Source: Isurus oxyrinchus
Taxonomy: Eukaryota
DNA length: 64,000 nucleotides
Assembly (NCBI GenBank): GCA_026770705.1
Contig: JANJGN010000031.1
Location: 1,302,001-1,366,000 of the forward strand
Direction of reading: 5' to 3'
This document shows, in pieces, positions 2,805 through 45,542 of the stretch (the stretch's first letter is position 1; every line of letters begins with the position of its first letter). The notes under the pieces are model-generated. The model saw only the letters and a list, made by a program, of their open reading frames with translations. It was not told where the DNA came from and did not search any database. Position numbers and translations under genes: made by a program.

Positions 2805-3860
2805 AGAAGGCGAAAAACAGAATATTGCGAATGCTGAACATCTGAAATGAAACCGCAAAGTGCTGGAAATAGTCAGCAATTCGGATAGCATCTCACTCAA
2901 GCAATCAATTCAAGCTGTCCATTCGGAAATTCATTGAGGGTAGAAATATTCCACCTCGCCATAACGCAGCATTATTTAAGGCCTTATGTAACGAACTAAT
3001 CTGTGGAGATAGAAACAGAGGTAACTTTTCAGGTCTTGACCTGAAAAGGTCATCAGAACTCGGAAAAGTTTAAGATGTAATAGGCTTTGAAGAAGAGGTA
3101 GATGGGAGAAGGGGCAAAAAAGGGAGGCCCGAGATTGAGTGAAAGACACATGAGGTTACATGACAGAAGTGTTTGTCTTCCAGGGCCAAAGGGAAAGTCG
3201 ATGGGACAAGAAAATAAACAACGAAACAGGAGGTTTGCAAAGAGCGGCACTGCTGCTGAGAGAAACAAACAAGAGGAAATCTGAAGCAACATTTATTCTA
3301 GTGAAGTTCACAGTAAGCTCGAGAGCAACACCTCATCTTCCCAACAGTCACTCTACATCCTTACAGACTTGGTACTGACATCAACAATCAGTTCTGTTGA
3401 AGGGTCATGAGGACTCGAAACGTCAACTCTTTTATTCTCTGCCGATGCTGCCAGACCTGCTGAGTTTTTCCAGGTAATTCTGTTTTTGTTTCAGACTGGA
3501 ATCTGTGACCTTTTGTTTCCATTTTTTGCCTGTTTCTGCTTTTCTCCCAGTTTTGCTTTCCGTCAGCAGCAGAGCCCCTCTAGGTACACCTCTGTTTCTT
3601 CGTGGCTTTTCTTGCGCCATCACCAATCCCTTCGGCCCTGAAAGGCCAACTCCTCTGTTATATAATCTCTTCCACCCAATCACAGAGCTTCCTTTCTCTC
3701 CCCGACTCCGTCCCTCAACCCATTCCTGGCACGAACCTATTACATTTCGAACTTTTCCCAGTTCTGATGAAAGGCCAATGCTCTGAACCATTAACTCGGT
3801 TTCTCTCTCCTCAGACGCTCCCGGAATTGCTGAGTATTTCCAGCATTTTCTGCTTTTATG
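2805..3860. mobile_element. Nested and inverted Penelope-like terminal repeats
   Basis: Opposed copies of the same repeat, with a younger insert at about 3388-3492. Confidence 0.6.
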
Positions 3861-4536
3861 TCCCTTAGAAGACCTTTTGTGTGGGACGACGAACGTGTTA
3901 GAAATTCTACAAACAAACTTTTCGTTACACACGAGATGGACAAAAGTAGCAGATTAAGCAGGAAGGAAAGATGAGAAGAAATAATGGAAAGGTGAAAGAA
4001 GGAATCAAGGAAGGAATGGAAAATGAAAAGAATGGGAGAATATAATAAGACTTGGTTTTCATCCACTGATAAAGTTTTCTTTGTCCGCAGGCAGCGCTTG
4101 GATCAGAGAAGATATCAGTGCCTGAAACATGTTTAGATGCATCCCGAGAGGGGCCTGCTACATAGGAACAGGAGGAACCAATTTAGACCTTCCCGAAACT
4201 GTTACAAAACAGAAGGTAATTAAAAGTCTCTCCAGCCTGTTACACAACAGCAGTATATTCATCCCCTGGAACTGGTTACATACCCCTCCGAGCCTGTTCC
4301 ATATGAACGAGAGGAAAAGATTCAGATTTGACTAAATTGGTAAATGCAATTGCGGCTAAACACAGTGGCAAATGCAATAAGAATAAATGGGAAAGTGACA
4401 ATCCTTTTACTTCTGATTGGCTGGCAGGGATGTGTCCACACGTTCTTATGTCCCTCAGGCTTTCATCGGTGATTTGAAGAGAGCGGGTTGGCTCCACATA
4501 AGACTCAGCCCTTCTGTTTTCGCTCCTTCCCTTATT

Positions 4537-4585
4537 AGGAAGCAGAAGGTATAGCTTGTCTTGGGCTTGGTGATTTTGTTTCACA
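4537..4585 (+). pseudogene. Leader exon of the inverted Vbeta, defective
   Basis: 49-nt phase-1 exon RKQKV*LVLGLVILFH with donor A|gtaagg; presumed ATG reads AGG; internal TAG. Confidence 0.6.
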
Positions 4586-4776
4586 GTAAGGAAATTTATT
4601 CAAAATTTCGCGCTTTCTTTTTCTTCCCCACCCCTCATTTTCTCCCTTTTTCTCTGCCCCCACCCCCTTCTCTTTCTTTATTTCCGCTCGCTTTTTTCTT
4701 TCATTATTTCGTTTGCTCTCTCCACTACCGGAATGTCGCTGTTTATTGACCTCCTCTCGCTCTGTATTCTTCCTCG

Positions 4777-5064
4777 GCGTGAACGCACAGATGATCCTCC
4801 AGTTTCCCGCTGCTGTCTCCAAATCTCTTGGGCAGGGAGTAGTTCTGAACTTCATCCTGCAGGGCACCAGTACTGGCCGTAGGCTCTGGTACAGGCTGTA
4901 CGCGAGGACGGAGCTCAAGTTAAAGTTTTACTCCCAAAATACACAAAGTGTGAGTCCCGGTGGACGGTTTCACCGGCCGGAGACCGAGTGGCTCCGATTT
5001 CAAGCTGGAGACCCCCAGCCTGCGGGCGAATCACTCGGCCGTGTATTACTGCGCCTGGAGTTTT
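4777..5064 (+). pseudogene. TRBV: Inverted Vbeta pseudogene 3' of Cbeta (TRBV30/Vbeta14-like)
   Basis: AQMILQFPAAVSKSLGQGVVLNFILQGTSTGRRLWYR...LKFYS, frameshift near 4958, then VDGFTGRRPSGSDFKLETPSLRANHSAVYYCAWS. First Cys is Phe (TTC 4851); acceptor AG reads CG. Confidence 0.93.
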
Positions 5065-5102
5065 CACAGTGACTCAGAGAGATGGGCAACTCAACAAAAA
5101 CC
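5065..5102 (+). other. RSS of the inverted Vbeta (23-type, 22-nt spacer)
   Basis: CACAGTG, ACTCAGAGAGATGGGCAACTCA (22 nt), ACAAAAACC. Confidence 0.93.
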
Positions 5103-5705
5103 TCAAAGGCGGCAGGAAACAGCTGTATATGAAATAGAAACAAACAGCCACCGTGTCAGTACGGGTTTGTTTTGCGGATTGCATCAATTTCTGAGAATAA
5201 GAGACTAAAATGATAGATGAAAACAGGAGAGATTGAAAGAACTAAGCAGTGCGGGGAAGAATGGAGTACACATTGAATGCAGAGGCGAAGAAGAGATAGA
5301 GTGTAAGAACCAAGGAAGAAATGATCGAAAGAGTGGAAGCGTACAGAAGAAGGGTTCCAGAATAGTACCAGTGATGTCAGTTAACTGGGCAGACACGAAA
5401 AGATGCAATTGTTCTCCTTAATGCAAGAGCAGATTTATCAGAATGGTACCAGGATTAAGCATCTTCAGTTACATAGACAGACTAGAGAAACTGGGATTCG
5501 GCAATATATGGAAGACACATGGGAGTTTTATGAGAGTTACTTACAATTATGCAAGGTTTCTTTAGGCGAGGGACTGTTTTGTTGCAGAACCCACTGCTTG
5601 ATATTTGTAGTGACATTTACAATTGAATCAGCTACTTTCCAGAAAATGAACAAGGGAGAATAGATAACTCGGGGACGATGGGCCGCATGGCCTCCATCTT
5701 GTACT

Positions 5706-5910
5706 AATATAGAACTCAAAACTGTATTAAAATCATCCGGCACCAGCCACATTTCCAATTAGATGTCCGAATCCTTTCAATCTTAGGGGGCTAACGATGC
5801 CCAATTGAGCATGGAGCTCAACAGAACCCCCCAGTGGCACACCACTGATTACTTCTGCGCCGGCAGTGATGCACAGCATGTGGAAATACCGTTTCTCTGT
5901 TATAGAAGTC
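5706..5910 (+). pseudogene. TRBV: Second inverted Vbeta relic (3' half) with 23-RSS
   Basis: NIELKTVLKSSGTSHISN*MSESFQS*GANDAQLSMELNRTPQWHTTDYFCAGSD, then CACAGCA-23-ATAGAAGTC (5872-5910). The 5' half is replaced by a LINE tail. Confidence 0.7.
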
Positions 5911-6309
5911 CCAAAACCTAACACAGAGCCCCAAGGTAGATGAAAAATTCTGCAGATGCTGGATATCTGAAACAAAAACAGAAACTGCTGGAAAAGCTTA
6001 ACTGGTCTAACAGATCTGTGGGGAGAAAGACAGAGTTAATGATTCGAGTCCGCATTTCTTCTTTGGAGCTAAAGAGAAGCAAAAATGTGATGAAATGTAT
6101 ACTGTTTGTGGGGAATGGAGCAGGTGACGCTGGATAGAAGGCCAGCAATAGGTGGGGGTAAAGAGCAGATCAGCAAAGGTGTCTTGAACAAAATGACAAG
6201 GAGGTGTTAGTGGTAGAGGTACTGCGTGTGGAACATCTTCAGTCTGTCCGCAAGCATGACCAAGGCCTCCCTGCTGCTTGCTATTTCAACACCTCATTCT
6301 GATGCTCCC

Positions 6310-6965
6310 GTGTCCTCCTTTTCTGAATTGTAAACTGCTTCCAATCCTCAGGTCTGTTGTTTTTCTGGATAATTTGTACGCCTTGTTCATTGGATCTAAT
6401 GCTATCTCTAATTCTCTTTGTAAGCCATGGTTTAGCCACCTTTCCTGGTTTAATTTTGCACCAGACAGGAATAAACAATTGTTACAGTTCTCCCATGCGT
6501 TCTCTGAATGTTTGCCATTGCCTATCCACGGTCATCCCTTTAAATAACGTTTCCCAATCTATCATAGACAACTCGCGCCTCATACAATCGTAGTTTCCTT
6601 TATCATTAAGACTTGGGGCCCTAGGCTCAGAATCAACTACGTCACTCTACATCTTGATGCGGAATTCTATCATATTATGGTCGCTCATCTCCAAGGGTCT
6701 TCGCACAACTAGACTGCCAATTATTCCTTTCACATTACACAATACCCAGCCAAGGATGACCTATTCTGTAGTTGTATCCTCAACGTATTAGTCCACAAAA
6801 ACATCCCGTATACACTCCATGAATTCCTCCTTTATGGTTTTCCAATAATTTGATTTGCCCAATCAATATGCATTTTAAAGTCACCCATAATTACAGATGT
6901 TCTTTTATTGCATACATCTCTAGTTTCCTGTTTAATGCCATTCCTAACATCATGACTACAGTTTC
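6310..6965 (-). mobile_element. CR1-type LINE ORF2 fragment
   Basis: KPWLTKRIRDSIR..NRPEDWKQF..KRRT resembles the CR1 endonuclease-RT linker. Confidence 0.7.
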
Positions 6966-6994
6966 CTCACCTTTATGTACTTATGCTTATGTAT

Positions 6995-7904
6995 CGCTAT
7001 GACACAGTCGATGGCAAATGCTGAGTTGTTCAAAACCCAAAGAGAAACTTGAAACAGCTGCCACAACTTGTTTTTCTGTTTGTATAAATTTCGAGATGCG
7101 TGCCTTGAATTCACTAGTAATAAGACCATCAAGTCTTATAGGTTTTACAAAACCAGGTTAAACATTTATTAATACAAGAAATTACTTTAACTATATAGAT
7201 AGATCTACAAATTACTACTATGATAACCTTTCAATCCCCTAATCAATCTAACTCCCAGTTACACTTTCGTTAAGGCAATCATAATGCACATAGATTTTAA
7301 AAGGCCCAGGCAACGAAACATGGTACCCTGAACAAATCGAATTTAAAGTGAGTTTTCTTAACTTCAGCCCTTTGAAGACAGCAGCTTGAGGCTTAGATGC
7401 TGAAGGCTTTTCTCACTTGTAAATCTTAAAATGCCTACCCTTACATACATCCTTCACTACTTAATATATATCTTCCCCTTTGAATACAAATATCCATTGT
7501 TTCACTATGTTTTGGGCATTATTTTCCTGATAATAAAAGTGACACATAGCACTATGTTTTACCAATAATCTTTAGGAAAAATAAATACACTCTTTCTAAA
7601 CTTCACCTGGCTAGGTGACATATTACACTCCTCCTTTTGAAGACAATCTCATCTGGTTTATTTAAAATACAAATGTTCCGTTGACACCTATGTTTCTAAA
7701 CTTCCCCATGTTTACAGAATTAACATTTCAAGCTAACTCTTCTTCTTACATCAAAACATCCAGACTGTAATTCAAGTAAATCTCACCCACACACAGAGAC
7801 CGCTATAGCACACAGACATATGTAGGCACATTGATATGTCCTACTATTACTCAATATTACACTAAATTCCAATAACATTTTGAGAATTATTATATCTCTC
7901 TGGC
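6995..7904. mobile_element. Solo LTR, older copy
   Basis: Similar along its length to 54125-55450; termini decayed. Confidence 0.55.
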
Positions 7905-23277: not shown

Positions 23278-23304
23278 TCAATCAAATCTTTTGCTGTAAG
23301 ATGT
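23278..23304 (-). CDS. TRBC: TCR beta constant exon 4 coding part (cytoplasmic tail and stop)
   Basis: T-rich tract then gcacag|ACA TCT TAC AGC AAA AGA TTT GAT TGA = TSYSKRFD*; phase 0 matches the exon 3 donor. Confidence 0.85.
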   Translation of the reverse strand, partial: TSYSKRFD

Positions 23305-23799
23305 CTGTGCACAATGAAAAAAATACAGTCTGCCTTTTAATCATTTTAAAACCAGAATCATACAGCACAGAAGAAGGCCAACCTCCTGGCATTTCTAAAG
23401 GGATAGCCAATTAATCCCAATTCCCAGCTGTCTTCCCATAGCCCTTATCCAGATCGCAACACTTATACATCCAGCGTCATTTTGAAAGTTACTATTGAAT
23501 CTGTTTCTATTGCCCTTTCTGGCTGTCAGTTCCAAATCAGGACAACTCGCTGCATAAACCGCCACCACCACCATCCCCCCACCCCCATCTCCCCCCACCC
23601 CCCCACCACCCCCCCCCCCCCCCAGCTCCTCCTTTGGTTTTTTTGGTCAGTTATTTTATACTTCTGCGCTCTGCTTACCAATCCACCTACCACTGGACTC
23701 AGTGTCCCATTACTTACACAAGGCTCTCAATTGTGTCTGAGCCATTTCTGCACTCTTCCCTTCCCCACCCCACCCAGAACCTCTTTTTCCACCCCGCCA

Positions 23800-24730: not shown

Positions 24731-25664
24731 CTCACCATTTACACCACTGACTCTGTTCATGATTTTCGAACACTTCTGTGAAATATCCCCTTACACTTCC
24801 CTGCTGTAAGGAGCACAATCCACTTTTCATGCAATAACAGACGTGATGCATCCCTGATACCATTCAAGGAAATCTCTTCATGCTGTGCAATGACTTGACA
24901 TCACTGCCCTGACAAAATCAGTAATAGTCGTTATGACTCATACTATCCTGGTCATGCTTTCTTGATCTTAAACCCAAAGCGTTGTTAAAAAGCAGAAAAC
25001 TGTGTTTATTTGTAAAAGAAAATCATGAATCACAACAGAATAAAATATATTCAATTCTGGTTTTTTACATAGTGTCATGGGCAATTTGAGTGAAATGGAA
25101 GTTTTTTTTTCATTCGAATAATGTAGAATAAAAATCAACAATAGGAGCCTCTAACATGAGATATGCACTGGCACATCCAACAGTGAATTCAACGGAAACA
25201 TATTTTTACCCAGGGACCAGTTAAAATGTGGAACTTGCCACCATTTACAGTTATTGAGGCGAATAGTAAAGATGCTGCCATGGCAGAAGGTAGATAAGCA
25301 AATAGATGTACGCAGTAACAGAAGGTCATGGTGCTAAGGTCAGATTAAGTGAGGTTGGGCTAGTATGATGCGTAAACAGTGGCAGGCACAATTAGGGCTG
25401 AAAGGGCTATTTCTGTCCTATAAGTGTAATTCTATGAATGAATAGATGGATTTCTTCATTGACATCATTTAAAATCATGTAAAACCGTTAGCATGAACGT
25501 GGAGTGCAATTTTGCTGCAGAAAATCTGTAGCATGAGATTCGGTCAAAGTATAGGGACCCAACGACTGAAGGAACAACATTTTTGTTCCTGCTTGGGCAC
25601 CATAAAGAACCCAGCTTCACTTTTGGAATGCATATTTTAATACATTTAGTTAGTTTAATCTGAC

Positions 25665-25771
25665 CTTGGTTTTCCAAGCAAGTATTGAGACGAATAGTCC
25701 ATAAAAGATGCTTTTGCAGATCAGGGTCAGGTACGTCAATTTTGCTGCTCCCATGCTTTGCATTTTCGCTT
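25665..25771 (-). CDS. TRBC: TCR beta constant exon 3 (transmembrane)
   Basis: cacag|AA...AAG|gtcaga; 107 nt; EAKMQSMGAAKLTYLTLICKSIFYGLFVSILAWKTK with the intramembrane Lys and the Y..L..K...Y pattern of TCR beta TM. Confidence 0.95.
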
Positions 25772-27423
25772 CTGTGAAGTAAATATAAGGAACAATTTGG
25801 AATTCCTGTTCTCTAGAAGTAAGGAATTCTATTGTTAGGAAATGAAACCTATCTTAATCTCATGATCCCAGCCTAAGAGTTGAGTTGTAAAAAGATAATG
25901 TTCGCCTTTGATGCGAGAAGTTGCTCTACGCCCTACCCCACTACAGTAAGCCTACTTCAATGACGTCCCATATCCAATTATGAACACTGCTATCTCCTGT
26001 GGGGATCATGCTAACATTTCCACCGCCAACCCTCAAAGACGAAGCAATATCTTAATTGGTAGCTCAGGAGTGTATGGGTGGAAGCTTGTTAAACCATAAC
26101 TCCGTGGGGAGATTTCTCCCTTCGGGGCCAAAAGATCATGCCCCACTCCAGAGCCCCATAATCCATATCAAAAGTCCCAGTGTCAGTAGAGCCGAAACAT
26201 TGCACGATTGGACCAACCATTTTTCAGACAGGGCCTTAGATCGATGAGCTGATGCCCTCTCTGGCGAATGTAAATGAATCGGCAGCAGCATTGTGATCTC
26301 CAGTATGCCTGTTCCTTAACCGACGTCACAAATAACAGATTATCTGGTCATATATCTCCTTGTTTTTTGTGGGATGTTGCTACGTGCAAATTAGTTTCTG
26401 CAACCCCTACGTTATAGTACTGATTTAAATTTCAAAGTACTTCATTGGCTACAAAGAGTTTCGGGATGTAATTCGGTCCTGAAAGGCACTACATAAAACT
26501 CCCCTTCTCCAAAGAGCGGAACTTCACTTCTTGTTTCTGCGCTACATTCAAACTATGATCTCACAGGAGGAACTTTAAGTTTTAAGACAGATGGACTCCC
26601 TCCATCCACCGCCAGGCCTTTCTTTTCCCTCATCACAGCGAACGTTCATTTCTATGAATTGAGTCCAGGAGACCTCGATACTAATTCAGTGGGCCATCAT
26701 TGTCTGGAAAGCCTAGCTACATTTCTCTCCCGACATGAATTTTCTAATAAACTCTGTGGCAAACGCAGTTTTGTTTTTAATGGAAAGCAAGTGTTTCCAA
26801 ATGTTGAAATGACTGTATGCACGCAATATCCGATACGGTACTAATTGCAGAATTACAATTTATCGCTCTGACTATTTAAAATCATAGCCTTATTATGGCA
26901 TAACAGAAGGCCATTTGGCTCGTCCAGCCTATGCCGTCTCTGTAGAGCTGTTCCGTTAACTCCATTCCCCTACTCTATCTCTGTAGCCCTGCAACTTTTT
27001 TTCTTTCAACTATCCATCTAATTTTCTTTTGAAATCATTGGTTACCATCGCTTCCAACACAATCATGGCCATTTCAGATCATTGCCTTTCTCTGTATGCA
27101 AAGAAAAGCTCTTTGTTGCATTACTCCTACATCTCGTACCCAAAACATTAAAGCTGTGCCCCCTTGTCCTTGTGCCATCAGGTAATGGGACAGTGTTTCT
27201 TTGTCTACATTATCTAAATCTATCATAATCTTGTACACCTGCATCAAATCTTCCCTCACTCCTCCTTTCTTCCAAGGAGAGCAATCCCAGCTTTCACAAC
27301 CTTATAGCTAAAAGCCCCATCCCTGGAAACATTTTGGTAAGTCTCCTTGGCGCCCTCTTAACGACCGTCTATTCTTCCCAAAGCGCGTTGCCCAGAAGCA
27401 GATAGAAGGATATGGAGGCTTAC

Positions 27424-27444: not shown

Positions 27445-27765
27445 CTGAAACAAAATCAAAATAAAAGCAACGAGTTAGCACCAGATGCTTTATGAAATCA
27501 GTGTATATTTGCAGATGATCACCGTTGTAAGACACACTCAGCCTGATACATTATGACAGTCGTGTTAATATAGTTTTGAATATTGTTTCCGAGTACATTT
27601 ACATGTTCTATGTGTTTTTTGAATGATTTATTTAGTCATTTATTGATTTACAGATTCATCTACGTGTTACTCATTCATTGTGAAGGGCACGGGCACTACG
27701 TAAGTGCAAGATATTGCTTCCTTTGAAGCTAAAATGCAATGGCATGGGCCATTTTTATGACCTAC

Positions 27766-28116
27766 CAGTTTTGATGTGTAGCGTGTAATTAGATTCATGA
27801 AAATCTGATACTCCAATATAATGCTTCACTGCGCACGTAATTGTCTTAACCCAGATCCAATCTTGGGCATCGAGCCTCAGGCGACTGCTGATGCTGAAGG
27901 ATTTGTTCCCTTCACTTGGGATGGAATTGAGGTCGGTCTGAATGCTTGGGTCGTTGGCCTTCTTCACCATGTCATCGACGAACCACTTGATCTCGATGTT
28001 GTCGGGGTAGAAATCAGTTACAAGGCAAACCACAGTCGCTTTCCCCTTCACCTTAATTTCTTCAGGGGAGGGTTCAAAGATAGAAACGTTGGCGTTCCTA
28101 ATTTTGTCATTCTTAT
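27766..28116 (-). CDS. TRBC: TCR beta constant region exon 1 (Ig C1-set domain)
   Basis: Translates (D)KNDKIRNANVSIFEPSPEEIKVKGKATVVCLVTDFYPDNIEIKWFVD...SFSISSRLRL...ITCAVKH...IKT. The FEPS..EI..KAT.VCL..FYPD and SSRLR motifs are Cbeta hallmarks. Acceptor cag at 28119-28117, phase-1 donor G|gtagg at 27765; 351 nt, open. Confidence 0.97.
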
Positions 28117-29284
28117 CTGCGTGGGAATTAAACAAAACTAAATGGAGAGAACATGGATGAGGATGAAAACAGTCCGAGGAGTTTAAACAATATAACGTTT
28201 CAATCTTAGGACAATTAACTTAATGCTAAGTTCAGAACAAACCTACTTCCTAACAACCATGCCACCCGTTACAATAAATCACCGAATCAGTTTGCAAGAT
28301 GTGGGTGTTTTATATGTTTTGACCAGAAATGATGTGACTTGGTAATTAGATCACTAAGTGAAATGTAACTCTGCATCAAGCACAAGATATTTTCCTGTCA
28401 ATCTAAAAATGTGATCTGCATTATGGACCAATTTGTCATCAATTCACTGGACTATCATTTAGTCTGTCCCTGAAAAGTCCTTTCCAATTCTACGCATGCC
28501 TACCTCCCCTCACGTGATCAACAATGTAATTATTGCAATCATAAACTGATATGGTAAATAAGGAGGCTGTTCAGCCCAACGTGTAACTGCAGGGACTTTG
28601 CTGGAGGTATCAAGTTAGTCCCACTTCCTCCGCCTTGCCCTTCTCTCATCGCGCAGTAATCTGCTATCAAGTTGGTCTCCTCAAGTTTCCTCCATTTGCT
28701 TTGTATAAATTGCTGCTGAGTCTGCTTCCATCATCATGTCAGGTAGTGCATTCCGGATTAAACACCTAGGTCTGAAAAATATCAGCATCTCCCCTCTGCC
28801 TTTTTATTTGCCAATCGTCTTAAATCAGTAAATTTCAGTTTCAATTAAATATATTTCATTTTGAAATATTAAAGTGTCTGGGTTTGCAGTCAATTACCTG
28901 CGAGGCTGCCTGAATATTAGACAGGGATTTTATTCGATTAAAATGATAGAATCAACAACACAGCAAATGATTCCCAATCTTGTTGAATTTTTTGGTCTGA
29001 ATGTTGAACCAATGATCAGTTGAAGTAATTATATTGAAACGGCTGGAGCTCTTTTCTTTAGAAAATGGTGGAGTGAGCGCTGAATGAATAGAATGCTTAA
29101 GATGCTGAAAGGTTTGAAAGGACAGGCTTGAAAAATATCTTCCTACTCGCGTATGTGTCTGGCTATGTATATATGTGAGTGTGGTGTGTGTGTGCGTGTG
29201 TGTTCGGGAGGGGTGGGGGTTGGGTGGGAGGTGGACTAGGGTGATATTTAACACGAATGTAACTTAAATGTAAGATAGTCAGAA

Positions 29285-36189: not shown

Positions 36190-36760
36190 CAGAGTAAAAT
36201 AGTAATATCAAAATTGCTGGGGCCATATCATTGCAGAATATGTTTTTATCTGGCTCCACTGAACACATTTATTTGACTAACAGCAATGCCTAGATTCATC
36301 TGGCCTTCCCTAGCCTATTCAATTCCAAAGGGAGGGCAATTGATAGCAGTGAAATTATTCTAAACTTTTATAGTATCTTCTCTAGACTTGCAGCACAGAT
36401 ATATGGACACTAGAACTGTGCACAATGCTTCAAATATAAAATTACTCAAATATATGAACACCAAAAACTGATCCCAGTTCTGGTCTCCTTGTATATTTCT
36501 ATTTATCTTGACTGAGGGCAACCTGATAAAGGTGGTTACAATGATGAAAGGTGAATTAGAAGAGGTGCATGTTGAGAAATCTTATAACCTGCCTATTTAA
36601 CAACATTGTCATTGTAAATTCTTCATCTTGCAATTCAACTTTACTCCAAGTTACCCAGCCTTTGTTTCTTTTTGTGAGCTTTCAACCAATTATGAAACAA
36701 GGAATGAACACTTGTAACAAATTAAAGGTTAAACACTAAGATACATTCTTGTTCACCCGT

Positions 36761-36816
36761 CTGGAATTGACAGCTGAGTCCCAGGGCCAAAGGAATAAAT
36801 CGAGCTCTCAGATGAA
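36761..36816 (-). pseudogene. TRBJ: Jbeta with good RSS but no in-phase splice donor
   Basis: SSESSIYSFGPGTQLSIP; RSS CACAATG-12-GGTAGAACT (36817-36844). Expected G|GT reads G|AC; next GT (36756) is phase 2 and an in-frame TGA follows. Confidence 0.85.
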
Positions 36817-36847
36817 CACAATGCTGCAGGCCAGTGGTAGAACTCAT

Positions 36848-36900
36848 TTGGGCCTCAGTTGGAGTCTTGTGCCAATTTCTAAATACGAGACTTTCAGAAA
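36848..36900 (-). pseudogene. Degenerate Jbeta relic
   Basis: SYLEIGTRLQLRP followed by ATGAGT (decayed GTGAGT donor); it abuts the nonamer of the next J RSS. Confidence 0.4.
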
Positions 36901-37975
36901 GGTGGCAAGGCATTGGATAGTGTGTAAATGAGATTTACTAAAATAGTGGATGGGGGAGTTCAGTAATGTAAAGGGGCCGGAGACTATAAGGTTGTTTTCC
37001 AGGAGGAGCTTAAGGGGAGAATTATTGAACTCATTCAAAGCCATGGAGGGTTTTGCTGGAGTAGATTATGGAGAAGATATTTCCACCAGCCAGAGATTTT
37101 GCAACCAGAGGACATAGATTGAATTTAATTGATAAAAGAGTGGAAGCTTTGATGAGGAGTTATTTCTTTAAACAGCCAGTTGTTCTGATATGGAATGTGT
37201 AACCTGAAAAGGTACTGGAAACAGTTAAATGTTAACAGTTAAAGGTTAAATGTTAAATTTCAACAGAGGATTGGATGATTCTCAAAGAGGAGAAAATTAC
37301 ACAGGTATGTGGAAAGAACAGGATGAGTTCGACTAAATGGATAACTCTTTCAAAGAGCCGGCTCCAATAAAATGGCCGAAAGCCTTTTTTTTGCATGCAG
37401 TAAGATTCTATTATCTAACAGCGCATTGGTCTATTTATTTTCTAACAAGAACAACTAGGCCTTGCAATTTTCTGCAATTAATAACAATGGACATTCACTT
37501 TAGGAGATCTCAGTATCAGGATTTTAATATTATCAAACTTCACAACTTTGTTCATGAATGGGATTGCTCAATATAGAATAAAAACAGATGCATATTTGTC
37601 TGGTTCTGGTCAGAAGACCATAAAGTGTGGCTTGAGAATAGACAATTATGTTCACTCCTTACAGCCTCCTCTATCCTAGATTCTACTTTAAGCAATAATT
37701 CTCTACAGGAATAATTCTCAGAAATATCCCCAAATTTCAAAACAATAAGCCAAACACAAGACGACATGTCTACCATAATGTCTCTTTTAAACTTGGCAGT
37801 GCATTTCCCTGTTGGTCTGACGCCATTTGAATGTTTTATAAATCTTGCAAGGCTTTATGAGATTTAAGATATTTTCATTGATAAGTGGGACATGGGAAAG
37901 AAACTAGCTTTTGAAGAATATAAGCAATTGTGTATCAAATGGTTTAAACCAACAATGTATTTTACATTTACCCAC

Positions 37976-38028
37976 CCAAAATTGTAACTTTGGCCCCTTG
38001 AGCAAAATATCATGGATTTTTGTTTGTG
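37976..38028 (-). pseudogene. TRBJ: Jbeta pseudogene
   Basis: TNKNP*YFAQGAKVTIL G|gtgggt; in-frame TGA, FAQG in place of FGxG, degenerate RSS. Confidence 0.75.
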
Positions 38029-38549
38029 CAGCCCCATGCTGCTCAACGTTGCAAAACTGTTAACTAAAGCAGCCTATTGAACCAAGCAGGGGGGTATTCA
38101 GACTCTCCAGCCTGCTCCACTATTCTCCATATTCCTTGATACTCTCACCCATCATAAATCTATCCGTCTCAAACTTGAAAGTTCCACTTGACCCTGAGCA
38201 CCAACTGTCTTTTTGCGGGGTGGTAGGGCGACTGTGGAGTGATTTCTATCTACATTTCTGTGAAAACGTGTTTCCAGATTTCACTTCCAAATGGCCTAAA
38301 ACTAATTTAAAAATGTTGTCCTCTTAGTATGAATTTTTCCACTGGATGTGAAATCAGCTAAAATCCACAAGGACTTCACATTCTGATACCCTACGTTAGA
38401 TATCCCAGGGCATTTTTCTGTTTATTAGACTTGAAATATATCGCTATACTTTTCAAAGTACATAGCGATTTATGATATTCCCATTGATGATTGGAATATT
38501 GGGGAGTATTAGGCCATTGCATTAGGCTATCAAATGGTTTAAACCAACA

Positions 38550-38587
38550 CTGATGCCACACCGAACATAATGGTATGTCTATAATAA
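38550..38587 (-). pseudogene. Possible 3'-truncated Jbeta relic
   Basis: YRHTIMFG followed by GTGGC (frameshifted FGxG), next to CAAAGTG (38588-38594); no donor. Confidence 0.3.
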
Positions 38588-40284
38588 CAAAGTGTTTACC
38601 GTTTTAATGACCTGACAATACTTAACACAATGATAATCAATCCCGCTGGCCCAGAAATGTAACAATTATTAAGAACGATATTTCATTACTACATGTGGTA
38701 AATTGTTCTTGGAGGTGTTAATAAGATGACTTTTTAAATATTTACATTTTTCATTGCTTTTTCTTTCTGTCTCTTCTCTCTATCTCTCTCTCTCCCTCTC
38801 TATCTCTCTGTATCTCTCTCTCTCTTTCTCGCTCTCTCCATCTCTCCCCCTCAGCACAATCTTTCTTTCCTTTGCATTATGTCTCTTTCTGTACCTGACA
38901 TCACTCGATTTCACCCTGCCTCTCAATCATCATTGCTTATTGGCTTTCGTAGGAGTGCAGCTGATTTCCCAGATCACATCTGGAATTCAATAGATGTACC
39001 ATGAGGAAAGTTTAAAGGAAATGGGGTTTTATTAATTGGAATTTAGAAAGTTTAGGGGTTTCTTTCAAAATACTGTGGGGAACTGATAGGGGAGATGGAG
39101 AAAAACTGTTTCCCACATTGTGTACCCTGTTACTCGGGGGCATTGTCTAACAAAGAGAGACGGACCTTTCAGGAATGAAATTGGAAACACTTCTACAAGC
39201 AAAGGATAGAATAAGTTCGGATCTCCCTTCCGCAAAAGACCGTTGATCCATTACCAGTTGGCATCTTCAATCTGAGGTTGTTTATTTTTGTAAATATAAG
39301 TTATTCAGGAATGTGGGGCAAAGGCGGGTATTGGGACTTAGAGCGGAAATCAGCCATGATCCTTCTGAATGGTGGAATAGACTCGAGGGGTTAAATCCAG
39401 CTCTCGTGTTCCTATGATTCTAAGTTCGTACAAATCGCACTCGAACCTATTCATAGAGTCAGTTTTCAACTCCTCTTCAGATAAAGTTCCCCAAAATTCT
39501 CGCAACTCTGAGTTCAAAAGGATCTAATTTTCAATTTCCCAAAGCTTTTACATATATTACCATAGGCAACTGACCTGCTCGCGAGAGAAAATCGTTTCCC
39601 TTCAAGCATTTCACCAATTATGCCTTTTTCCATTCTTTAACAACTTCTCGGCTTCGCTGGCTAGCCCAACAATTATTGCCCGTCCCTACTTGCCTCTGAG
39701 ACGGTGGTAATGAGCTGCCTTCTTGAACAGCTGCAGTCCATGTGGCTTAGATAAACTGATAATGCTCGTAGAGAGCGAGTTCCAGGATTGTGAACAAGCG
39801 ACAGTAAAGGCATGGCAATATATTTCCAATGACCTAAAATGTGACGCCTTTGGTTGCAGACCCTCCTGCCAATGGAAGCAGTTCTGATTGTTTTATCTAC
39901 CCAACACATTCGTTATTTCCGAGGCCTCGGTCAAAACATCCCTTATCCTATTCTGTTCTAAGGAATACAGTTCCAGCTTTTCCAGTTTCGATATCCTTTG
40001 CATGTGGAAGTGTTTGCCAATTTCACTCCTGGTGAAGGTCTGGCTCCAGGTTTTCGAGCAGCCCCCCGAGTCGTCGAATACCCAATCAATGGAAATAGTT
40101 TCTCTCTATCTACCCATTTCCCCTAAATATCTCGAAATTGCCCCTTAACCATCTAAATTCCAATAATTAAAATACAATTTTTGTGATCTTTTTCCGTAAT
40201 CATCCTGTTTTATAAATCCTCTTGCAATTATTCTCTCTGACACCACTTTCATCATAAGTGCCAAATCAACTCAATAGAACTTAC

Positions 40285-40336
40285 CCAAAATCATGAGTTT
40301 TGAACCATCGCCAAATGTATAATCATAGCTTCCTAA
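40285..40336 (-). CDS. TRBJ: Jbeta segment; open, non-canonical RSS
   Basis: LGSYDYTFGDGSKLMIL G|gtaagt; RSS CATTATG-12-AAGAAAATT (40337-40364), CAT in place of CAC. Confidence 0.9.
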
Positions 40337-41192
40337 CATTATGTTAAACGGTTGTAAGAAAATTAGTGCCTCTTTAACTCTGTACAAGTTCGTTCATGAA
40401 TGCAATTTGATCATTTTGTATTGTGATATATTCCACCCTACTGCTCTTTTTCTTCTTCTTGGCTGTACATTTTCTTGTTGTCTTTAACCCCTACAGTTCT
40501 ATCTCTCTAATTTCCCATCCTCCCAGAGTGTTGGCTACATATTGCTCTGGATCTGGAGTTTGGAGAGATGAGAGGAGATTTTGATAAATCATAGACGGTT
40601 TGGATTAGGGCCTGACAGGGGCGAGGGTGAGAGGGTGTTTGTTCTCGTGTGGAATCTAGAACTCTGGGGAAATCGTTTCAGAATGAGCGGTTAGCCATTT
40701 GAAACATGAGAAGGAATTTATTTTCTTGCAGAGTCACGAATCTTTGTAATTTTCTATCTCAGAGAGCTTGGGAAGCTGGACCTATGAATACATTCAAGAC
40801 ATAGTTAGAGACATTTTGAACTATAAGGAAGTCAAGGGTTATAGGGAACACAGCGTAAGGTGGGATTGAGTCAAGATCAGGTCAGACATAATATTTCTCA
40901 TCAAGCTGGAGGGTCCGAATGGCTTTCTCCTGCTCTTATTCATTATGCTCTTACGTTGGTTCTATGTATATGGTTGCCAATTCCTCTCTCACTCTCCCTT
41001 CAACCACACCTATCTTTTTTTCTTATGTTCAGATAGTTACTGTATTTATTAATCCTTTAATACAACCTTCACTCTTTTTCCAAATTTCATATTGTGTCCC
41101 CTTTCTTTAAATTGATTAGAATAAATTAGTCGTATGTTTCAATGCTCATTGAGATAAAAACATTGATACTTCTTCATCCACAGCTCACTTAC

Positions 41193-41249
41193 CTAAAACA
41201 GTTAACTTAGTGCCATCTCCAAAGTGCAAGGGTTCATTGCCAACATTCA
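41193..41249 (-). CDS. TRBJ: Jbeta segment, likely functional
   Basis: NVGNEPLHFGDGTKLTVL G|gtaagt; RSS CACACCA-12-ACAAAAATT (41250-41277). Confidence 0.95.
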
Positions 41250-41649
41250 CACACCATCATGTCACTTCACAAAAATTATTCTCACTAGCGACCTGGCAAA
41301 ACCTGCTGCCTAACTCATTGATATTTGATAGCCACCTTTAGTTCACGAGATAACAACAAGATAAGGAAAACTCATGAGCTAACCAGGAGGTTTCCAATTA
41401 AAATTAAATGCATTCTCAATACTGCCTGTCCATCTATATTTGCCCCTGTATATCATGCTTTAAGGCCACACTCCTGACAGTGATACAAGATTTCCCCTTC
41501 ATTCCTCAATTAGGCATTTAACTCTGCTTCAAACATACGATTCTTACTTCATTAAAAAAGGAAATCGCACTCACATAAAATTGTTAACTTCGACCCTTCC
41601 CCAAAATTCAGAGGGTCGTATCCGCTTGCACTATACTAAACAACAATAC

Positions 41650-41795
41650 CAAAACACAGCGATGATAGACAGACGTTCAGACAAGCAGGTAAGTAGATAG
41701 ATAGATACACAGGCAGATAGATAGACAGACAAACAGACAGACAGGTAGCTAGGTAGATAAATAGACGGATAGGCAGACAGACAGATAGATATTTG
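41650..41795. repeat. GATA/GACA tetranucleotide microsatellite in the J cluster
   Basis: Runs of agat and agac. Confidence 0.85.
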
Positions 41796-41848
41796 ATAAA
41801 ACGATGCATTCACATATATATATTTATACTTATGTCAACGTAACTTAC

Positions 41849-41898
41849 CTGAAACAGTCACTTTGGTCCCAGCTCCAAAATAATAGATGGCAGCAGAG
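41849..41898 (-). CDS. TRBJ: Jbeta segment, likely functional
   Basis: SAAIYYFGAGTKVTVS G|gtaagt; RSS CACAACG-12-TATAAAACA (41899-41926). Confidence 0.95.
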
Positions 41899-43432
41899 CA
41901 CAACGGTTAATGCCTGTTATAAAACATCTTACCTATCTGTAATTCGTGTTGCTATGGGATTATGTGTAACAACGGAACACAGAGGAACATAGGATCAGAG
42001 GAACATGGGAACATAGGAGTAATGGAATATGACCTTATTGAAACAAGAGGAGGCCGTTTAGTTGATGGAGTTTGTTCCAACATTAAATTAGATCATGGTT
42101 AACTGTACCCTAACGATGCCGATGCATAACCTTTAATATTCTTGCCTAACAACAAGCAATGAATCAGAAATTTGATTTTTTCAATTGATAACACCCTCCC
42201 CAATTCCTCCTGTCTTATCAACTTTCTGGTGGAGATTTGTAGAATTCCACTCGACTTCGTGTGAACAACAATGCTTCCTGACATCACTCCTGAACGGTCT
42301 GGCTCTAATTTAATGATTTCACCCCTTTATTCAGCACCCGCCACACCAGAGCAAATAGCTGATTGCTATCTACCTCCACTGAATCCGATAATCAACTTAA
42401 ACACAACAATTGGATCACCCCTTATTCACCGATACCTAATATACTACAAACCCGGCTTAAGGTGCCTATTCTCAACATGTGACTCTTTTAAGCACGGTAT
42501 CATTTTGTTTAAGGAGGAAAGTTCATTCAACTCTTGAACGCCTCAGGGTGCATAGATACAATAGCTCAACAACACTAGCGATTTCGATTAGTAACTTTAA
42601 AGTACATGGCCTCTAAATGGTATTGTTTCATTACCATTACAGGTCAATGGGGAATACGTGGAATCACGTCGAATTTCCATAAGGTTCTATTCCTTTCTCG
42701 CCCATGTCTTTATACAGTATCTCCTTTAAACGCATCCAAGCTATTCGCCTCAAACCTGTATTTCCCCACTCTCTGGGGAAAAACGTTTCTCCAGAATTTC
42801 AGATTGGATTTATTAAGGGCTATTTTACATTGATACCACCCCTCCACCTCTTGCCTCCCCGCACCCCCCCACCCCACCCCCCCATTCACCACCCCCGCCT
42901 TACCTCCGGTCTCCCCACAAGTGGAAACCTCTTCTCTGCATCTGCCCTATCGATACCCTTCTATCATTCTAATCTTTATCAGGTCAACCCTCAGCTCCAG
43001 ACCATTCAATCTCTCCCGATGGTTATAACTGCTCAGTTCTGCCATCAGCCTTGTTAATATTTCAACTGTATCTAATGCCTCTGCTGCTTACTTTATATTA
43101 GGTAGAATAGAACTGTGTAAAGAACAGTTGAATCTAACATTTTTAGCTTGATAGATGTGGCCTCTGTTTACTGTTCTGCTCCCATTGACCAAGCCATTCT
43201 GTTTACATCTATATTGTTGTTTGTTCTGCATACTTGAGAGGTCCCACTTTCTGTTCTTTCTCAGAGTCATTTCCCACAGTGAAGCGAATGCAACGGTGGC
43301 GAGTCTGTCTTAGTAAGCTGAAGTGTTGAAATTAATTCACCAATATTACCTATACTTTCACCCCCTCTCCCACCCGGCATGAATTGATGAATTGCAACAA
43401 CTTTCTCCAGTATTAGGAATGTGTTCGCTTAC

Positions 43433-43482
43433 CAAAAACGACCAGTTTTGTCCCACTTCCGAAATAAGCTTCATAAGCAGAA
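43433..43482 (-). CDS. TRBJ: Jbeta segment, likely functional
   Basis: SAYEAYFGSGTKLVVF G|gtaagc; RSS CACAATG (43483-43489), 12-13 nt spacer, GCAAAAATC. Confidence 0.95.
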
Positions 43483-44100
43483 CACAATGGTACAGGGCTA
43501 TAGCAAAAATCCCCCTGAAGCCAGCTATGTCATGTTTATTTTATTGGATCTTCTGCGATGTTAATGACCATTAAGGGATGTGGGAACAGGGGGACATTAG
43601 GCAGTTATTCAGCCCTTCAAACCTGTTCCATCATTCAATTATATAATGGCTGATCTGTATCTTAACCTCATCATCCAGTCTCGGTTCAGTAACCCTCAGT
43701 ACTTCTGCTTACCTACAATCTATCTATACAGAGTTGGAAGTTTTCAAACCCTAAATATTCTCAAAAGCTTTTTGGCGAGCAATTTTCTGATTCCCACCAG
43801 CTGCTTTATGAAGAGGAACTCTCCGACATAACACTTGAACGGTCTGGTTCTAATTTAAACGGTTCCGGGCTCCCCCCGGCCAGAGAAAGCAGCTCCCCTC
43901 AGCCCATTCAACCAACTTGTTTAACCGCCTTAAACGCCTCGATTATATTAAATACATCTTGTGTATTCAAAGGAAAGGAAAATCAGCTTATGTAACCAGC
44001 CCCGAGCTTTATATCTCTAATATCCAAACATAGGCCCTCGCCATTTTTAAATGTATATTGACATATATTTTGGTCAATAGAAGGAACAGAGTCGCCTTAC

Positions 44101-44146
44101 CCAAAACTATTAACTTTGTCCCGTCGCCGAAGTAAACTGCTCCCTG
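44101..44146 (-). CDS. TRBJ: Jbeta segment, likely functional
   Basis: QGAVYFGDGTKLIVL G|gtaagg; RSS CACAATG-12-TCATGAACA (44147-44174). Confidence 0.95.
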
Positions 44147-44821
44147 CACAATGCTGAATCCTGAGTCATGAACAGGCCTCGGGGTTGCCCCTTCCCAAGT
44201 GAGAGAGCTTGCGCCGTTAATAGGCAAATAATCACGCGGCAAGTGCACATGGTTCATGGGCACGATTTATAAAATTAAACATCTTATTCATCACTGCCTG
44301 GCAGATAAACTAGAAATAAAAAAGACGCTGGCTCACCCAGAACTGTTAGTTTGGTTCCTTGCCCGAAGTAATTCACATCTGCTGCACGGTGACACCTCAT
44401 CCCCTCAAAAAGCCTTTAAACGGCTATTGCTTTCCATTTGGCATGTATCCAATCTGCATGAATCCATTATCAACTGCATGGAGCCCATTCTAGTCTACAT
44501 GATTCCATGTTAACCTGTGAATGTTATGCCTACCCGTATGTTTTAGTTCTGGCCTATGGATTCTGTCTCGAACAGCAAGGTTAAATTCTGATCTCTATGG
44601 ATCATATTTTGATCTATAAATTCTACATCATCCTTTAAGAGTGCAATTATCAATTAATCACGGGCGATGTTTGTATTCTTTGTATGGTCGATTCACTACT
44701 CTTATATTGAACCAATTGGTGTAGCCATCTCCAAGTATTCTGACTACATAGAACGACTTATTATTGCTGGAGGATGAAACAGGATTCCTCCGATTCTAAA
44801 TAATGAGGAATATTAGCTCCA

Positions 44822-44864
44822 CCCCAGGGATTAACTATTGAACCAAAGCGCAAATAGATGCATT
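44822..44864 (-). pseudogene. Possible Jbeta relic
   Basis: CIYLRFGS next to heptamer-like CACAATA (44865-44871); rest of the motif and the nonamer are lost. Confidence 0.3.
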
Positions 44865-44993
44865 CACAATAGGCACGTTTCTCGCTGGTGATCTAACATG
44901 CGTCTGAATTTATAAACGTTCCTGACTGGCAGGAAGCCTGGAATACACATCGTTGTGCATGTACTTGGAGAAAAAATAAGTTTATTTTCTTAC

Positions 44994-45041
44994 CTAGTAC
45001 CGTTAGTTTGGTACCTCTCCCGAAGAAGGCTGTTGTCCCAG
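44994..45041 (-). CDS. TRBJ: Jbeta segment, D-proximal; open, non-canonical RSS heptamer
   Basis: GTTAFFGRGTKLTVL G|gtaaga. Best RSS is CAAATCA-12-ACATCAACA (45042-45069), which lacks the CAC. Confidence 0.9.
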
Positions 45042-45462
45042 CAAATCAGCAGGTCTGTTTACATCAACACCGTTGAAACATCGTCTCTTAGACATTAGTG
45101 CAGCGCCGATCAAGGCACCAGAACGTCCAAAGAAATATTGTTATCAAGTGATTACTATAGATAGACACAGGAGCCTAATTTCGCCAAGACATCGCATCAA
45201 AAGCAGTGTGATAAATGACCAGATCATTGTTTTATATTGGTTGAGAGATAAATAACGGCCAGGGCACTGAAGAGATGAGAGGTTGAAGAGTACCCGGTTT
45301 TTCCACAAATCACACAAAACAGTTCATTTTACATAAAAATGCCCTCGGCAGGCAGTCCCGATGCCCTTGACGATGCTTCCTCCATTGCCCCCATGAAATG
45401 TCCAAGCTTAAATTCCATTGTCGCCTCCTTTCTGCTGATCTTCCGACAGGTGTGTGCCTTGA

Positions 45463-45501
45463 GGTTTTTGTACAGAGACTGACTTGTATTTTATCACTGT
45501 G
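45463..45501 (-). other. Dbeta 3' 23-RSS
   Basis: CACAGTG, 23-nt spacer ATAAAATACAAGTCAGTCTCTGT, ACAAAAACC: consensus heptamer and nonamer. Confidence 0.97.
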
Positions 45502-45514
45502 TCCCCCCTGTCCC
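45502..45514 (-). other. TRBD: TCR beta diversity segment (Dbeta), GGGACAGGGGGGA
   Basis: Matches the conserved GGGACAGGGGG core of vertebrate TRBD1; open in all three frames (GTGG, GQGG, DRG); flanked by a 5' 12-RSS and a 3' 23-RSS. Confidence 0.97.
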
Positions 45515-45542
45515 CACGGTAATTTATACCCATACAAAAAGA
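45515..45542 (+). other. Dbeta 5' 12-RSS
   Basis: CACGGTA, 12-nt spacer ATTTATACCCAT, ACAAAAAGA. Confidence 0.93.

What the first reader, a model, noticed from the sequence alone, without database searches (positions are those of the whole stretch)
4537..5102. Inverted, CAWS-ending Vbeta 3' of Cbeta in a probable shark: the TRBV30/Vbeta14 architecture
Seen: a V gene on the strand opposite to D-J-C, about 18 kb past the Cbeta stop, ending YYCAWS with a consensus heptamer and nonamer. Known: mammalian TRB loci end with one inverted V (human TRBV30, mouse Trbv31/Vbeta14) that ends in CAWS and joins by inversion. The FR1/FR2 here (ILQFPA..LG..V.LN.ILQGTS...WYR..LKFYS) resembles it by eye. Inference: both the layout and this V lineage may date to the jawed-vertebrate ancestor.
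Basis: partly seen in the sequence, partly recalled or inferred. Interest (0 to 1): 0.85.

Follow-up and report, generated by a model that had tools for sequence, protein, structure and literature searches.

The report
Dead inverted V-beta after shark C-beta
A T-cell receptor beta V segment does lie backwards about 18 kb behind the C-beta gene of an elasmobranch, as human TRBV30 does, but it is a broken copy of a large shark V family that resembles TRBV30 as a whole, so it does not show that the arrangement is ancestral.

Summary
A V-beta exon lies on the + strand (4733-5064) and ends YYCAWS. It carries a perfect heptamer and nonamer (5065-5102). It sits 18.2 kb past the stop of a minus-strand D, nine J and C-beta cluster, with the two signals placed for joining by inversion.

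The V is a pseudogene:
- The leader is one base out of frame.
- There is an 8-nt deficit at the CDR2/FR3 border.
- Cys23 is replaced by Phe.
- The spacer is 22 nt; family paralogs have 23.

Contigs of a sister species, from two studies, share both frame breaks but keep Cys23. Divergence across the V equals that of its flanks.

The TRBV30 resemblance is real but family-wide. Elasmobranch CAWS V segments occur in arrays in at least seven species. A profile built from them picks TRBV30 chains as the only single-V T-cell receptor chains among its top PDB matches. The window's V nests among bamboo-shark members and is less TRBV30-like (34% identity) than most of them (31-43%).

Orthology of position to TRBV30 is therefore untested. 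Other readers of this scan noted CAWS V clusters right beside this window and near another C-beta in the same genome; I could not check those notes.

Verdict: a new lineage for a known layout, of moderate interest.

The parts
4733..4790 (+). Leader-like coding stretch. It starts at ATG and reads MSLFIDLLSLCI in the frame of 4733, then FLGVNAQ in the frame of the V exon. It runs straight into the V exon with no leader intron, and it is one base out of frame with it.
   Evidence: Translations. The FIDL...VN(S/A) leader is homologous to the one in Chiloscyllium punctatum protein P0005. No AG acceptor is present at the usual position.
4785..4955 (+). FR1, CDR1, FR2 and CDR2 of the V exon, including the WYR motif.
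   Evidence: phmmer hits to elasmobranch V arrays have E 6e-10 to 4e-8. The best PDB matches are TRBV30 chains.
4851..4853 (+). TTC (Phe) at the position of the first conserved cysteine (Cys23).
   Evidence: Sister-species contigs from two studies read G at 4852, which gives TGC (Cys). The source organism's own runs gave no depth at this base, so the Phe rests on the window's assembly alone.
4947..4959 (+). Frame break at the CDR2/FR3 border. The window has 25 nt between FYS and VDGF where family members have 33.
   Evidence: family alignment; frames. No gap in sister-species contigs across 4691-5046.
4957..5064 (+). FR3, ending ...LRANHSAVYYCAWS.
   Evidence: Pfam V-set E 0.0022, below the curated cut-off. 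It is 57-71% identical to the FR3 of other elasmobranch members.
5065..5102 (+). Recombination signal: CACAGTG, a 22-nt spacer, then ACAAAAACC.
   Evidence: Most paralog contigs carry one extra A after 5085, which gives a 23-nt spacer.
23278..23310 (-). Last C-beta exon (AQTSYSKRFD) and the stop codon.
   Evidence: tblastn with S. torazame protein P0001 and the translations.
25662..25772 (-). C-beta transmembrane exon.
   Evidence: 68% identity to P0001.
27755..28135 (-). C-beta exon 1 (coordinates are those of the open reading frame).
   Evidence: Pfam C1-set E 7.5e-18. 61% identity to S. torazame P0001.
36760..45060 (-). Nine J-beta segments. Their FGXG motifs start at 45024, 44367, 44131, 43463, 41879, 41605, 41223, 40315 and 36791.
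45463..45542 (-). D-beta core GGGACAGGGGGGA (45514-45502). Its 5' signal is TCTTTTTGT, a 12-nt spacer, TACCGTG. Its 3' signal is CACAGTG, a 23-nt spacer, ACAAAAACC.

Best explanation
This is a pseudogene of the expanded elasmobranch 'CAWS' V-beta family. It lies in the opposite orientation to a complete D, nine J and C-beta cluster, 18.2 kb beyond that cluster's last exon.

Geometry (shown). On the + strand, both the V signal and the 5' signal of D read coding end, heptamer, nonamer in the same direction. RAG-mediated joining of the two would therefore invert the roughly 40.4 kb between them, which carries C, the J segments and D. It would not delete that stretch. Human TRBV30 and mouse Trbv31 are known to join this way.

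State of the copy (shown). It can no longer encode a chain. The leader is one base out of frame. An 8-nt deficit breaks the frame at the CDR2/FR3 border. Cys23 is Phe in this species. The spacer is 22 nt against 23 in the paralogs. Both frame breaks predate the split from a sister species, and the V has since diverged at the rate of its flanks.

Inferred. The signal is still close to consensus, so the copy could still be cut and give non-productive inversions. The copy is probably the C-proximal edge of a larger V cluster on the 3' side of C-beta.

Family level (shown, moderate strength). The family as a whole is the elasmobranch counterpart of the TRBV30-like lineage of bony vertebrates.

Not shown. 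Whether the inverted position is inherited from the jawed-vertebrate ancestor or arose within cartilaginous fishes.
For: - Frames, signal and orientation.
- Pseudogene lesions located against intact family members.
- Sister-species contigs from two independent studies cover 4691-5046 with 7 substitutions and no gap, and carry TGC at the Cys23 codon.
- Divergence is about 2.0% in the V against 2.4-2.5% in its flanks (table 8).
- 6-9 paralog contigs per run match 4957-5126 at about 87%, most with a 23-nt spacer.
- The only hits in 1.8 billion representative proteins are multi-V gene models: four from elasmobranchs (Chiloscyllium punctatum twice, Mobula, Hypanus), whose complete V domains end CAWS, and one from the teleost Coilia.
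- A profile search added Chiloscyllium plagiosum, Heterodontus, Scyliorhinus, a human chain carrying the same V as the PDB TRBV30 chains, and a fox protein named 'T cell receptor beta variable 30'.
- In the maximum-likelihood tree, the window's V sits with Chiloscyllium members (support 92/84) inside the elasmobranch clade (81/73).
- With an elasmobranch-only profile, the TRBV30 chains 5xov_J, 3hg1_E and 4jfd_E are the only single-V T-cell receptor chains in the PDB top 60.
Against: - I could not read the DNA outside the window, so the position and orientation of the paralogs are unknown. The only evidence for a neighbouring cluster is unchecked notes by other readers.
- The source organism's own runs gave no depth at 4852, so the Phe in this species rests on the assembly alone.
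- No expression or rearrangement data were obtained.
- The tree has 98 columns and contains no mammalian TRBV family other than TRBV30, so 'TRBV30-like' rests mainly on PDB ranking.
- One CAWS subfamily (query Scyliorhinus P0017) did not bring TRBV30 into its PDB top 60.
Confidence: 0.75

Rival explanations
1. Both the inverted position 3' of C-beta and the CAWS V lineage are inherited from the common ancestor of jawed vertebrates, and this V is the decayed shark orthologue of TRBV30/Trbv31.
For: The layout is identical in kind. TRBV30 chains are the best PDB match to this V and to the elasmobranch family profile. The two V relics upstream of D, in the conventional orientation, are closest to a different, non-CAWS shark V family, so within this window the CAWS type is found only on the 3' inverted side. 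Morrissey et al. 2025 (PMC11754216) report that 3' inverted TRBV form one clade in amniotes and suggest the inversion is older. The AU test does not reject a clade of this V with mammalian TRBV30 (p 0.054).
Against: The V nests among members of multi-copy arrays of other elasmobranchs. It is less like human TRBV30 (34%) than most of them (up to 43%). Same-genome paralogs at about 87% identity through FR3, the signal and 25 nt of flank point to a duplication far younger than the ancestor of jawed vertebrates, unless gene conversion has homogenised them.
Confidence: 0.22
2. The V does not belong to this D-J-C unit. It is the edge of a large V array that serves another D-J-C unit, in a multi-unit locus like that of newts, axolotl or pike and salmonids. 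Its position 'behind' this C-beta would then be incidental.
For: Notes by other readers, which I could not check, report a 55-kb CAWS V cluster in both orientations ending 3 kb before the window, and another C-beta about 390 kb away with inverted CAWS V segments. Newt, axolotl and salmonid loci show such arrangements (PMC12698447; PMC10464911).
Against: On the + strand, the first recombination partner to the right of this V is the inverted D at 45.5 kb. No + strand D-J-C is present in the remaining 59 kb of the window. A conventional partner would have to lie beyond 64 kb, across this whole unit.
Confidence: 0.25
3. The inversion is an assembly error, and the V really lies upstream of D in the conventional orientation.
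For: Orientation across the 18 kb between C and V was not tested. That interval holds a reverse-transcriptase-bearing repeat, and the flanks of the V hold very high-copy repeats that break short-read contigs.
Against: The window has no gap. Sister-species contigs follow the window's order locally across 3830-5971, with short uncovered gaps. Other readers noted the same arrangement at a second C-beta in this genome, which I could not check.
Confidence: 0.05

Closest known systems
Human TRBV30 and mouse Trbv31 (V-beta 14): the single inverted V 3' of the last TRBC
   Same: It lies 3' of C-beta on the opposite strand, with a 23-type signal oriented so that joining to D inverts the D-J-C region. 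It ends in CAWS. Its framework aligns to TRBV30 without gaps across FR1-CDR2.
   Different: It is a pseudogene: two frame breaks, loss of Cys23 and a 22-nt spacer. It is 18 kb from C. It is one of a multi-copy family rather than a single-member subgroup. It is only 34% identical to TRBV30, less than most other family members. Flanking synteny with EPHB6 could not be examined.
Multiple inverted TRBV segments 3' of, or between, TRBC units in tuatara, Chinese alligator, axolotl and the newt Pleurodeles
   Same: Inverted V segments are associated with D-J-C units in non-mammalian vertebrates. In those species they form clusters rather than a single gene (PMC11754216; PMC12698447). If the unchecked neighbouring notes are right, this shark locus is of that kind.
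   Different: Those V segments are expressed and rearranged in the published data. Here the only copy I could read is dead. No cartilaginous fish locus is described in the papers I found.
Elasmobranch CAWS V-beta family (gene models in Chiloscyllium punctatum and C. plagiosum, Heterodontus francisci, Scyliorhinus torazame, Mobula birostris, Hypanus sabinus)
   Same: Shared framework motifs (WYR, FYS, VDGFTxxRP, SAVYYCAWS), similar V-domain length apart from the 8-nt deficit, and a leader with the FIDL...VN motif shared with P0005. Identity is 37-51% overall and 57-71% in FR3. The window's V nests in this clade.
   Different: The window's copy has frame breaks, lacks Cys23, has the shorter spacer, and has a long terminal branch (0.6 against 0.2-0.4).

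Membership tests
Germline TRBV gene segment | V-set framework landmarks: Cys23, Trp41 (WYR) and Cys104 (YYC) | tested here: inconclusive
   WYR and YYC are present. Cys23 is Phe (TTC) in the window but TGC in sister-species contigs. Pfam V-set matches only FR3, below the cut-off. phmmer E 6e-10 to elasmobranch V arrays.
Germline TRBV gene segment | A 3' recombination signal with a consensus heptamer, a 23-nt spacer and a nonamer | tested here: inconclusive
   The heptamer and nonamer are perfect. The spacer is 22 nt, one short of the paralogs' 23.
Germline TRBV gene segment | An open reading frame from the leader to the end of the V (a functional gene) | tested here: not met
   The leader is one base out of frame, and an 8-nt deficit breaks the frame at the CDR2/FR3 border. 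Both states are shared with the sister species.
3' inverted TRBV layout (TRBV30 type) | The V lies 3' of TRBC on the opposite strand, with its signal parallel to the 5' signal of D, so that joining inverts the interval | tested here: met
   The V is on the + strand at 4733-5102. C, the J segments and D are on the minus strand at 23278-45542. Both signals read coding end, heptamer, nonamer left to right.
3' inverted TRBV layout (TRBV30 type) | The V is rearranged and expressed in the beta-chain repertoire | not tested
The copy cannot be productive.
TRBV30 orthology group | Closer to TRBV30 than to any other TRBV family | tested here: inconclusive
   TRBV30 chains are the best PDB matches to the V (E 0.002) and to the elasmobranch family profile. 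The margin is modest, other mammalian TRBV families were not in the tree, and one CAWS subfamily did not bring TRBV30 into its top 60.
TRBV30 orthology group | This copy groups with TRBV30 to the exclusion of other V segments of cartilaginous fishes | tested here: not met
   The best tree nests it among Chiloscyllium members. Its identity to human TRBV30 is 34% against 31-43% for the others. The AU test on a forced clade gives p 0.054, so that clade is not formally rejected.
TRBV30 orthology group | Conserved flanking genes beyond the inverted V (EPHB6, TRPV6) | not testable with these tools

The most novel reading that the evidence does not exclude
TRBV30-like V segments placed backwards directly behind C-beta were already present in the last common ancestor of jawed vertebrates. 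Sharks kept and expanded the arrangement, and this window shows its C-proximal, decayed member.
Probability: 0.22. Interest if true: 0.7.

Novelty: new member of a known kind. Interest (0 to 1): 0.45.

Why it matters
In the papers I could search, inverted V segments 3' of TRBC are described for amniotes and salamanders and mentioned for salmonids. Their authors suspect that the inversion is old (PMC11754216). I found no description of a cartilaginous fish locus. A shark example moves the question to the base of the jawed vertebrates, and it can now be tested directly by annotating chondrichthyan TRB loci.

The wider by-product may matter more. The main elasmobranch V-beta family, a teleost family and mammalian TRBV30 look like one lineage spanning jawed vertebrates. 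That would make TRBV30 the surviving mammalian member of a very old V-beta type.

This particular copy adds little on its own. It is dead, it is one of many, and it cannot show that the position is ancestral.

Tried and rejected
- The search for homologous proteins on the V reading frame (residues 25-86) found no candidate sharing three words.
- Whole multi-V gene models sent to the PDB were swamped by two-domain scFv constructs and told nothing about TRBV type. The single-V protein P0017 had the same problem.
- Pfam found no V-set match in the 5' piece of the V, in the two upstream relics, or in the 5.8-kb motif.
- tblastn of 39 V domains against the window found nothing V-like between 5.1 and 8.4 kb. 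The 'cluster of relics' noted by another reader is therefore not supported beyond a YFCAGS motif next to a heptamer-like CACAGCA.
- AU tests that force this V together with TRBV30 were inconclusive (p 0.054 and 0.108).
- The reads tool could not test orientation across the 18 kb between C and V, and it gave no depth from the source organism at the Cys23 codon.
- Paper searches found nothing on the TRB locus map of any shark.
- A functional gene rescued by an intron was rejected. There is no AG acceptor near the leader/V border, and the 58-nt leader stretch is too short to hold an intron.
- No repaired or joined protein was sent to any search tool. The two pieces of the V were searched apart. 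In local scripts they were joined only with an X at the break.

Full report
**What is there.** On the + strand, 4733-5064 encodes a V-domain exon. An ATG at 4733 opens a hydrophobic leader (MSLFIDLLSLCI). One base out of register, the frame of 4785 continues with FLGVNA and then QMILQFPAAVSKSLGQGVVLNFILQGTSTGRRLWYRLYARTELKLKFYSQNTQSVS. After a second break, the frame of 4957 gives PVDGFTGRRPSGSDFKLETPSLRANHSAVYYCAWS. Directly after it come CACAGTG (5065-5071), 22 nt of spacer and ACAAAAACC (5094-5102). A scan of both strands finds only one other perfect heptamer-plus-nonamer site in the 64 kb, and that is the 3' signal of a D segment. The window has no N.

**The partner cluster.** All of it lies on the minus strand.
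- The D core GGGACAGGGGGGA is at 45514-45502. On its 5' side the signal is TCTTTTTGT, a 12-nt spacer, TACCGTG. On its 3' side it is CACAGTG, a 23-nt spacer, ACAAAAACC.
- Nine J segments with FGXG motifs, most with a clear GT splice donor just after the coding end, lie between 45024 and 36791.
- C-beta exon 1 is at 28135-27755 (Pfam C1-set, E 7.5e-18).
- A transmembrane exon is at 25772-25662. The last exon ends ...SYSKRFD, with the stop at 23280-23278.

The closest protein to C-beta exon 1 is from the catshark Scyliorhinus torazame, at 61% identity, so the organism is an elasmobranch. The V signal is 18.2 kb from the C-beta stop. Read on the + strand, the V signal and the 5' signal of D both run coding end, heptamer, nonamer in the same direction. 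By the established rules of V(D)J recombination, joining these two would invert the roughly 40.4 kb between them rather than delete it. Two details need correcting: there is no evidence for an exon at 4537, and the spacer is 22 nt.

**It is a pseudogene.** I aligned the V with intact family members. Between the FYS of FR2/CDR2 and the VDGF of FR3, the window has 25 nt where the family has 33. That 8-nt deficit shifts the frame. The leader is homologous to the FIDL...VN leader seen in Chiloscyllium punctatum protein P0005, but it is one base out of frame with the V. No AG acceptor is present where a leader intron would end, so leader and V are contiguous here. The codon for the first conserved cysteine is TTC (Phe).

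I laid Logan contigs and raw reads on 3200-8200. Two runs of a sister species, from different studies, each give a contig covering the V (4691-5046 in one, 4672-5046 in the other). Each has 7 substitutions and no gap, so both frame breaks are real and older than the species split. Both contigs read G at 4852, which restores TGC (Cys), so the cysteine was lost later in the window's lineage. The source organism's own runs gave no depth at that base, so the Phe rests on the assembly alone. Divergence between the two species is about 2.0% in the V and 2.4-2.5% in the flanking contigs. That is what a neutral, dead sequence would show.

**It is one of many.** In every run, 6-9 further contigs match only 4957-5126, which is FR3, the signal and 25 nt beyond it. 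They match at about 87%, and most carry one extra A in the spacer. The genome therefore holds a family of close paralogs with canonical 23-nt spacers, and this copy has lost one base. The paralog matches start exactly after the CDR2 deficit. That is expected for local matches that stop at a hypervariable region and an indel.

**Who the relatives are.**
- A full HMMER pass over 1.8 billion representative proteins with the 5' piece gave only five hits (E 6e-10 to 4e-8). All are gene models that string several germline V exons together. They come from Chiloscyllium punctatum (two), Mobula birostris, Hypanus sabinus and the teleost Coilia. The complete elasmobranch V domains among them end in CAWS.
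- A profile of these five (A1) recovered more members from C. plagiosum, Heterodontus francisci, S. torazame and Mobula. It also recovered teleost relatives, a human beta chain, and a fox protein that NCBI names 'T cell receptor beta variable 30'.
- The V of that human chain is the same sequence as the V of PDB chains 5xov_J and 3hg1_E. From memory, 3hg1 is the MEL5 receptor, which uses TRBV30.

**How TRBV30-like is it.**
- The 5' piece of the window's V, searched against all PDB chains, has those two TRBV30 chains as its best matches. They align without gaps over residues 2-56, but weakly (E 0.002, 19 of 55 identical). The FR3 piece matches V domains in general.
- The same is true of the family. 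A profile built from elasmobranch proteins alone (A2) places 5xov_J (88 bits), 3hg1_E (86) and the MEL5 derivative 4jfd_E (78.5) as the only single-V T-cell receptor chains in the PDB top 60. Everything else there is a two-domain construct.
- Pairwise, the window's V is 34% identical to human TRBV30. Other elasmobranch members reach 43%, and the alpha-type and heavy-chain V domains used as outgroups give 21-28%.
- In a maximum-likelihood tree of 40 V domains, the window's V sits with three Chiloscyllium members (support 92/84) inside the elasmobranch CAWS clade (81/73). Mammalian TRBV30 and the teleost relatives form a neighbouring clade (94/79).
- Forcing the window's V together with mammalian TRBV30 costs 18 log-likelihood units (AU p 0.054). 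Forcing it with the mammalian and teleost clade gives p 0.108. That is suggestive against the forced clades, not decisive.

For this tree the two pieces were joined with an X in a local script.

**What the evidence supports.** The layout is of the TRBV30 kind. The V type is TRBV30-like at the level of a whole, expanded elasmobranch family. Nothing singles this copy out as a positional orthologue of TRBV30. The paralogs at 87% identity argue that it shares recent ancestry with other family members, unless gene conversion has acted.

The only other V relics in the window lie upstream of D on the minus strand, at 55784-55578 and 60608-60324. Both carry stop codons. Both are closest to a non-CAWS Heterodontus V (E 5e-7 and 4e-5). 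Within these 64 kb, then, the CAWS type is seen only on the inverted 3' side.

They also report a second C-beta about 390 kb away with inverted CAWS V segments. I could not check those notes.

**Literature.** Morrissey et al. 2025 (PMC11754216) describe 3' inverted TRBV segments as common to amniotes. They report that these form one weakly supported clade, and they propose an earlier origin. The newt paper (PMC12698447) reports inverted clusters in newt and axolotl that are in use; the axolotl paper (PMC12529555) was checked but says nothing on inverted TRBV. Salmonids have head-to-head duplicated loci (PMC10464911). I found no paper describing the TRB locus map of a cartilaginous fish. Subscription journals are not covered by the library, so this is not proof that none exists.

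**Limits.**
- Orientation across the 18 kb between C and V was not tested with long reads.
- No RNA evidence was obtained.
- Mammalian TRBV families other than TRBV30 entered the comparison only through PDB ranking.

Noticed in passing
window 55578-55784 (-) and 60324-60608 (-): Two more V-beta relics lie 10 and 15 kb upstream of D, in the same orientation as D-J-C. Both carry stop codons (WCRQ in place of WYRQ, and LYY* in place of the second cysteine). They are closest to a non-CAWS Heterodontus V (tblastn E 5e-7 and 4e-5). Pfam does not detect them.
   Followed up: partly
window 5787-5900 (+): A short ...TTDYFCAGSD motif is followed by a heptamer-like CACAGCA. No nonamer lies at 12 or 23 nt, and the stretch shows no similarity to any of 39 V domains. 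Support for a second inverted relic is weak, and nothing V-like was found between 5.1 and 8.4 kb.
   Followed up: partly
window 4852: The sister species keeps TGC (Cys23) where the window has TTC (Phe). The cysteine was therefore lost after the frame breaks, in an already dead gene.
   Followed up: yes
window 4733-4790: The leader runs straight into the V exon with no leader intron. Gene model P0005 of Chiloscyllium punctatum also reads a homologous leader and its V in one uninterrupted stretch. A missing leader intron may therefore be a trait of this family.
   Followed up: no
window 19332-19997 (-): Reverse-transcriptase fragments (Pfam RVT_1, E 5e-10 and 2e-9) of a retroelement lie between C-beta and the inverted V. 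Part of the 18-kb interval is therefore inserted repeat.
   Followed up: partly
window 3367-3533, 3701-3867 and 5872-8042: Very high-copy repeats flank the V (summed contig depth from about 1e4 to over 1e6, falling to a few thousand near 8.0 kb, against about 20-30 for unique sequence). They break all short-read contigs around it.
   Followed up: no
window 45502-45514 (-): The D-beta core GGGACAGGGGGGA is almost the same as the GGGACAGGGGGC core that PMC11754216 reports as identical across lizards and snakes. The D-beta core is thus very strongly conserved across jawed vertebrates.
   Followed up: no
proteins P0002, P0014, P0015, P0020 and P0023 (teleosts): These teleost V segments share SNPNLYWYR, FYSV.IG and F(K/T)ASRP motifs with human TRBV30 (up to 44% identity) and form a clade with it (support 94/79). 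A TRBV30-like lineage is therefore at least as old as the bony vertebrates.
   Followed up: partly
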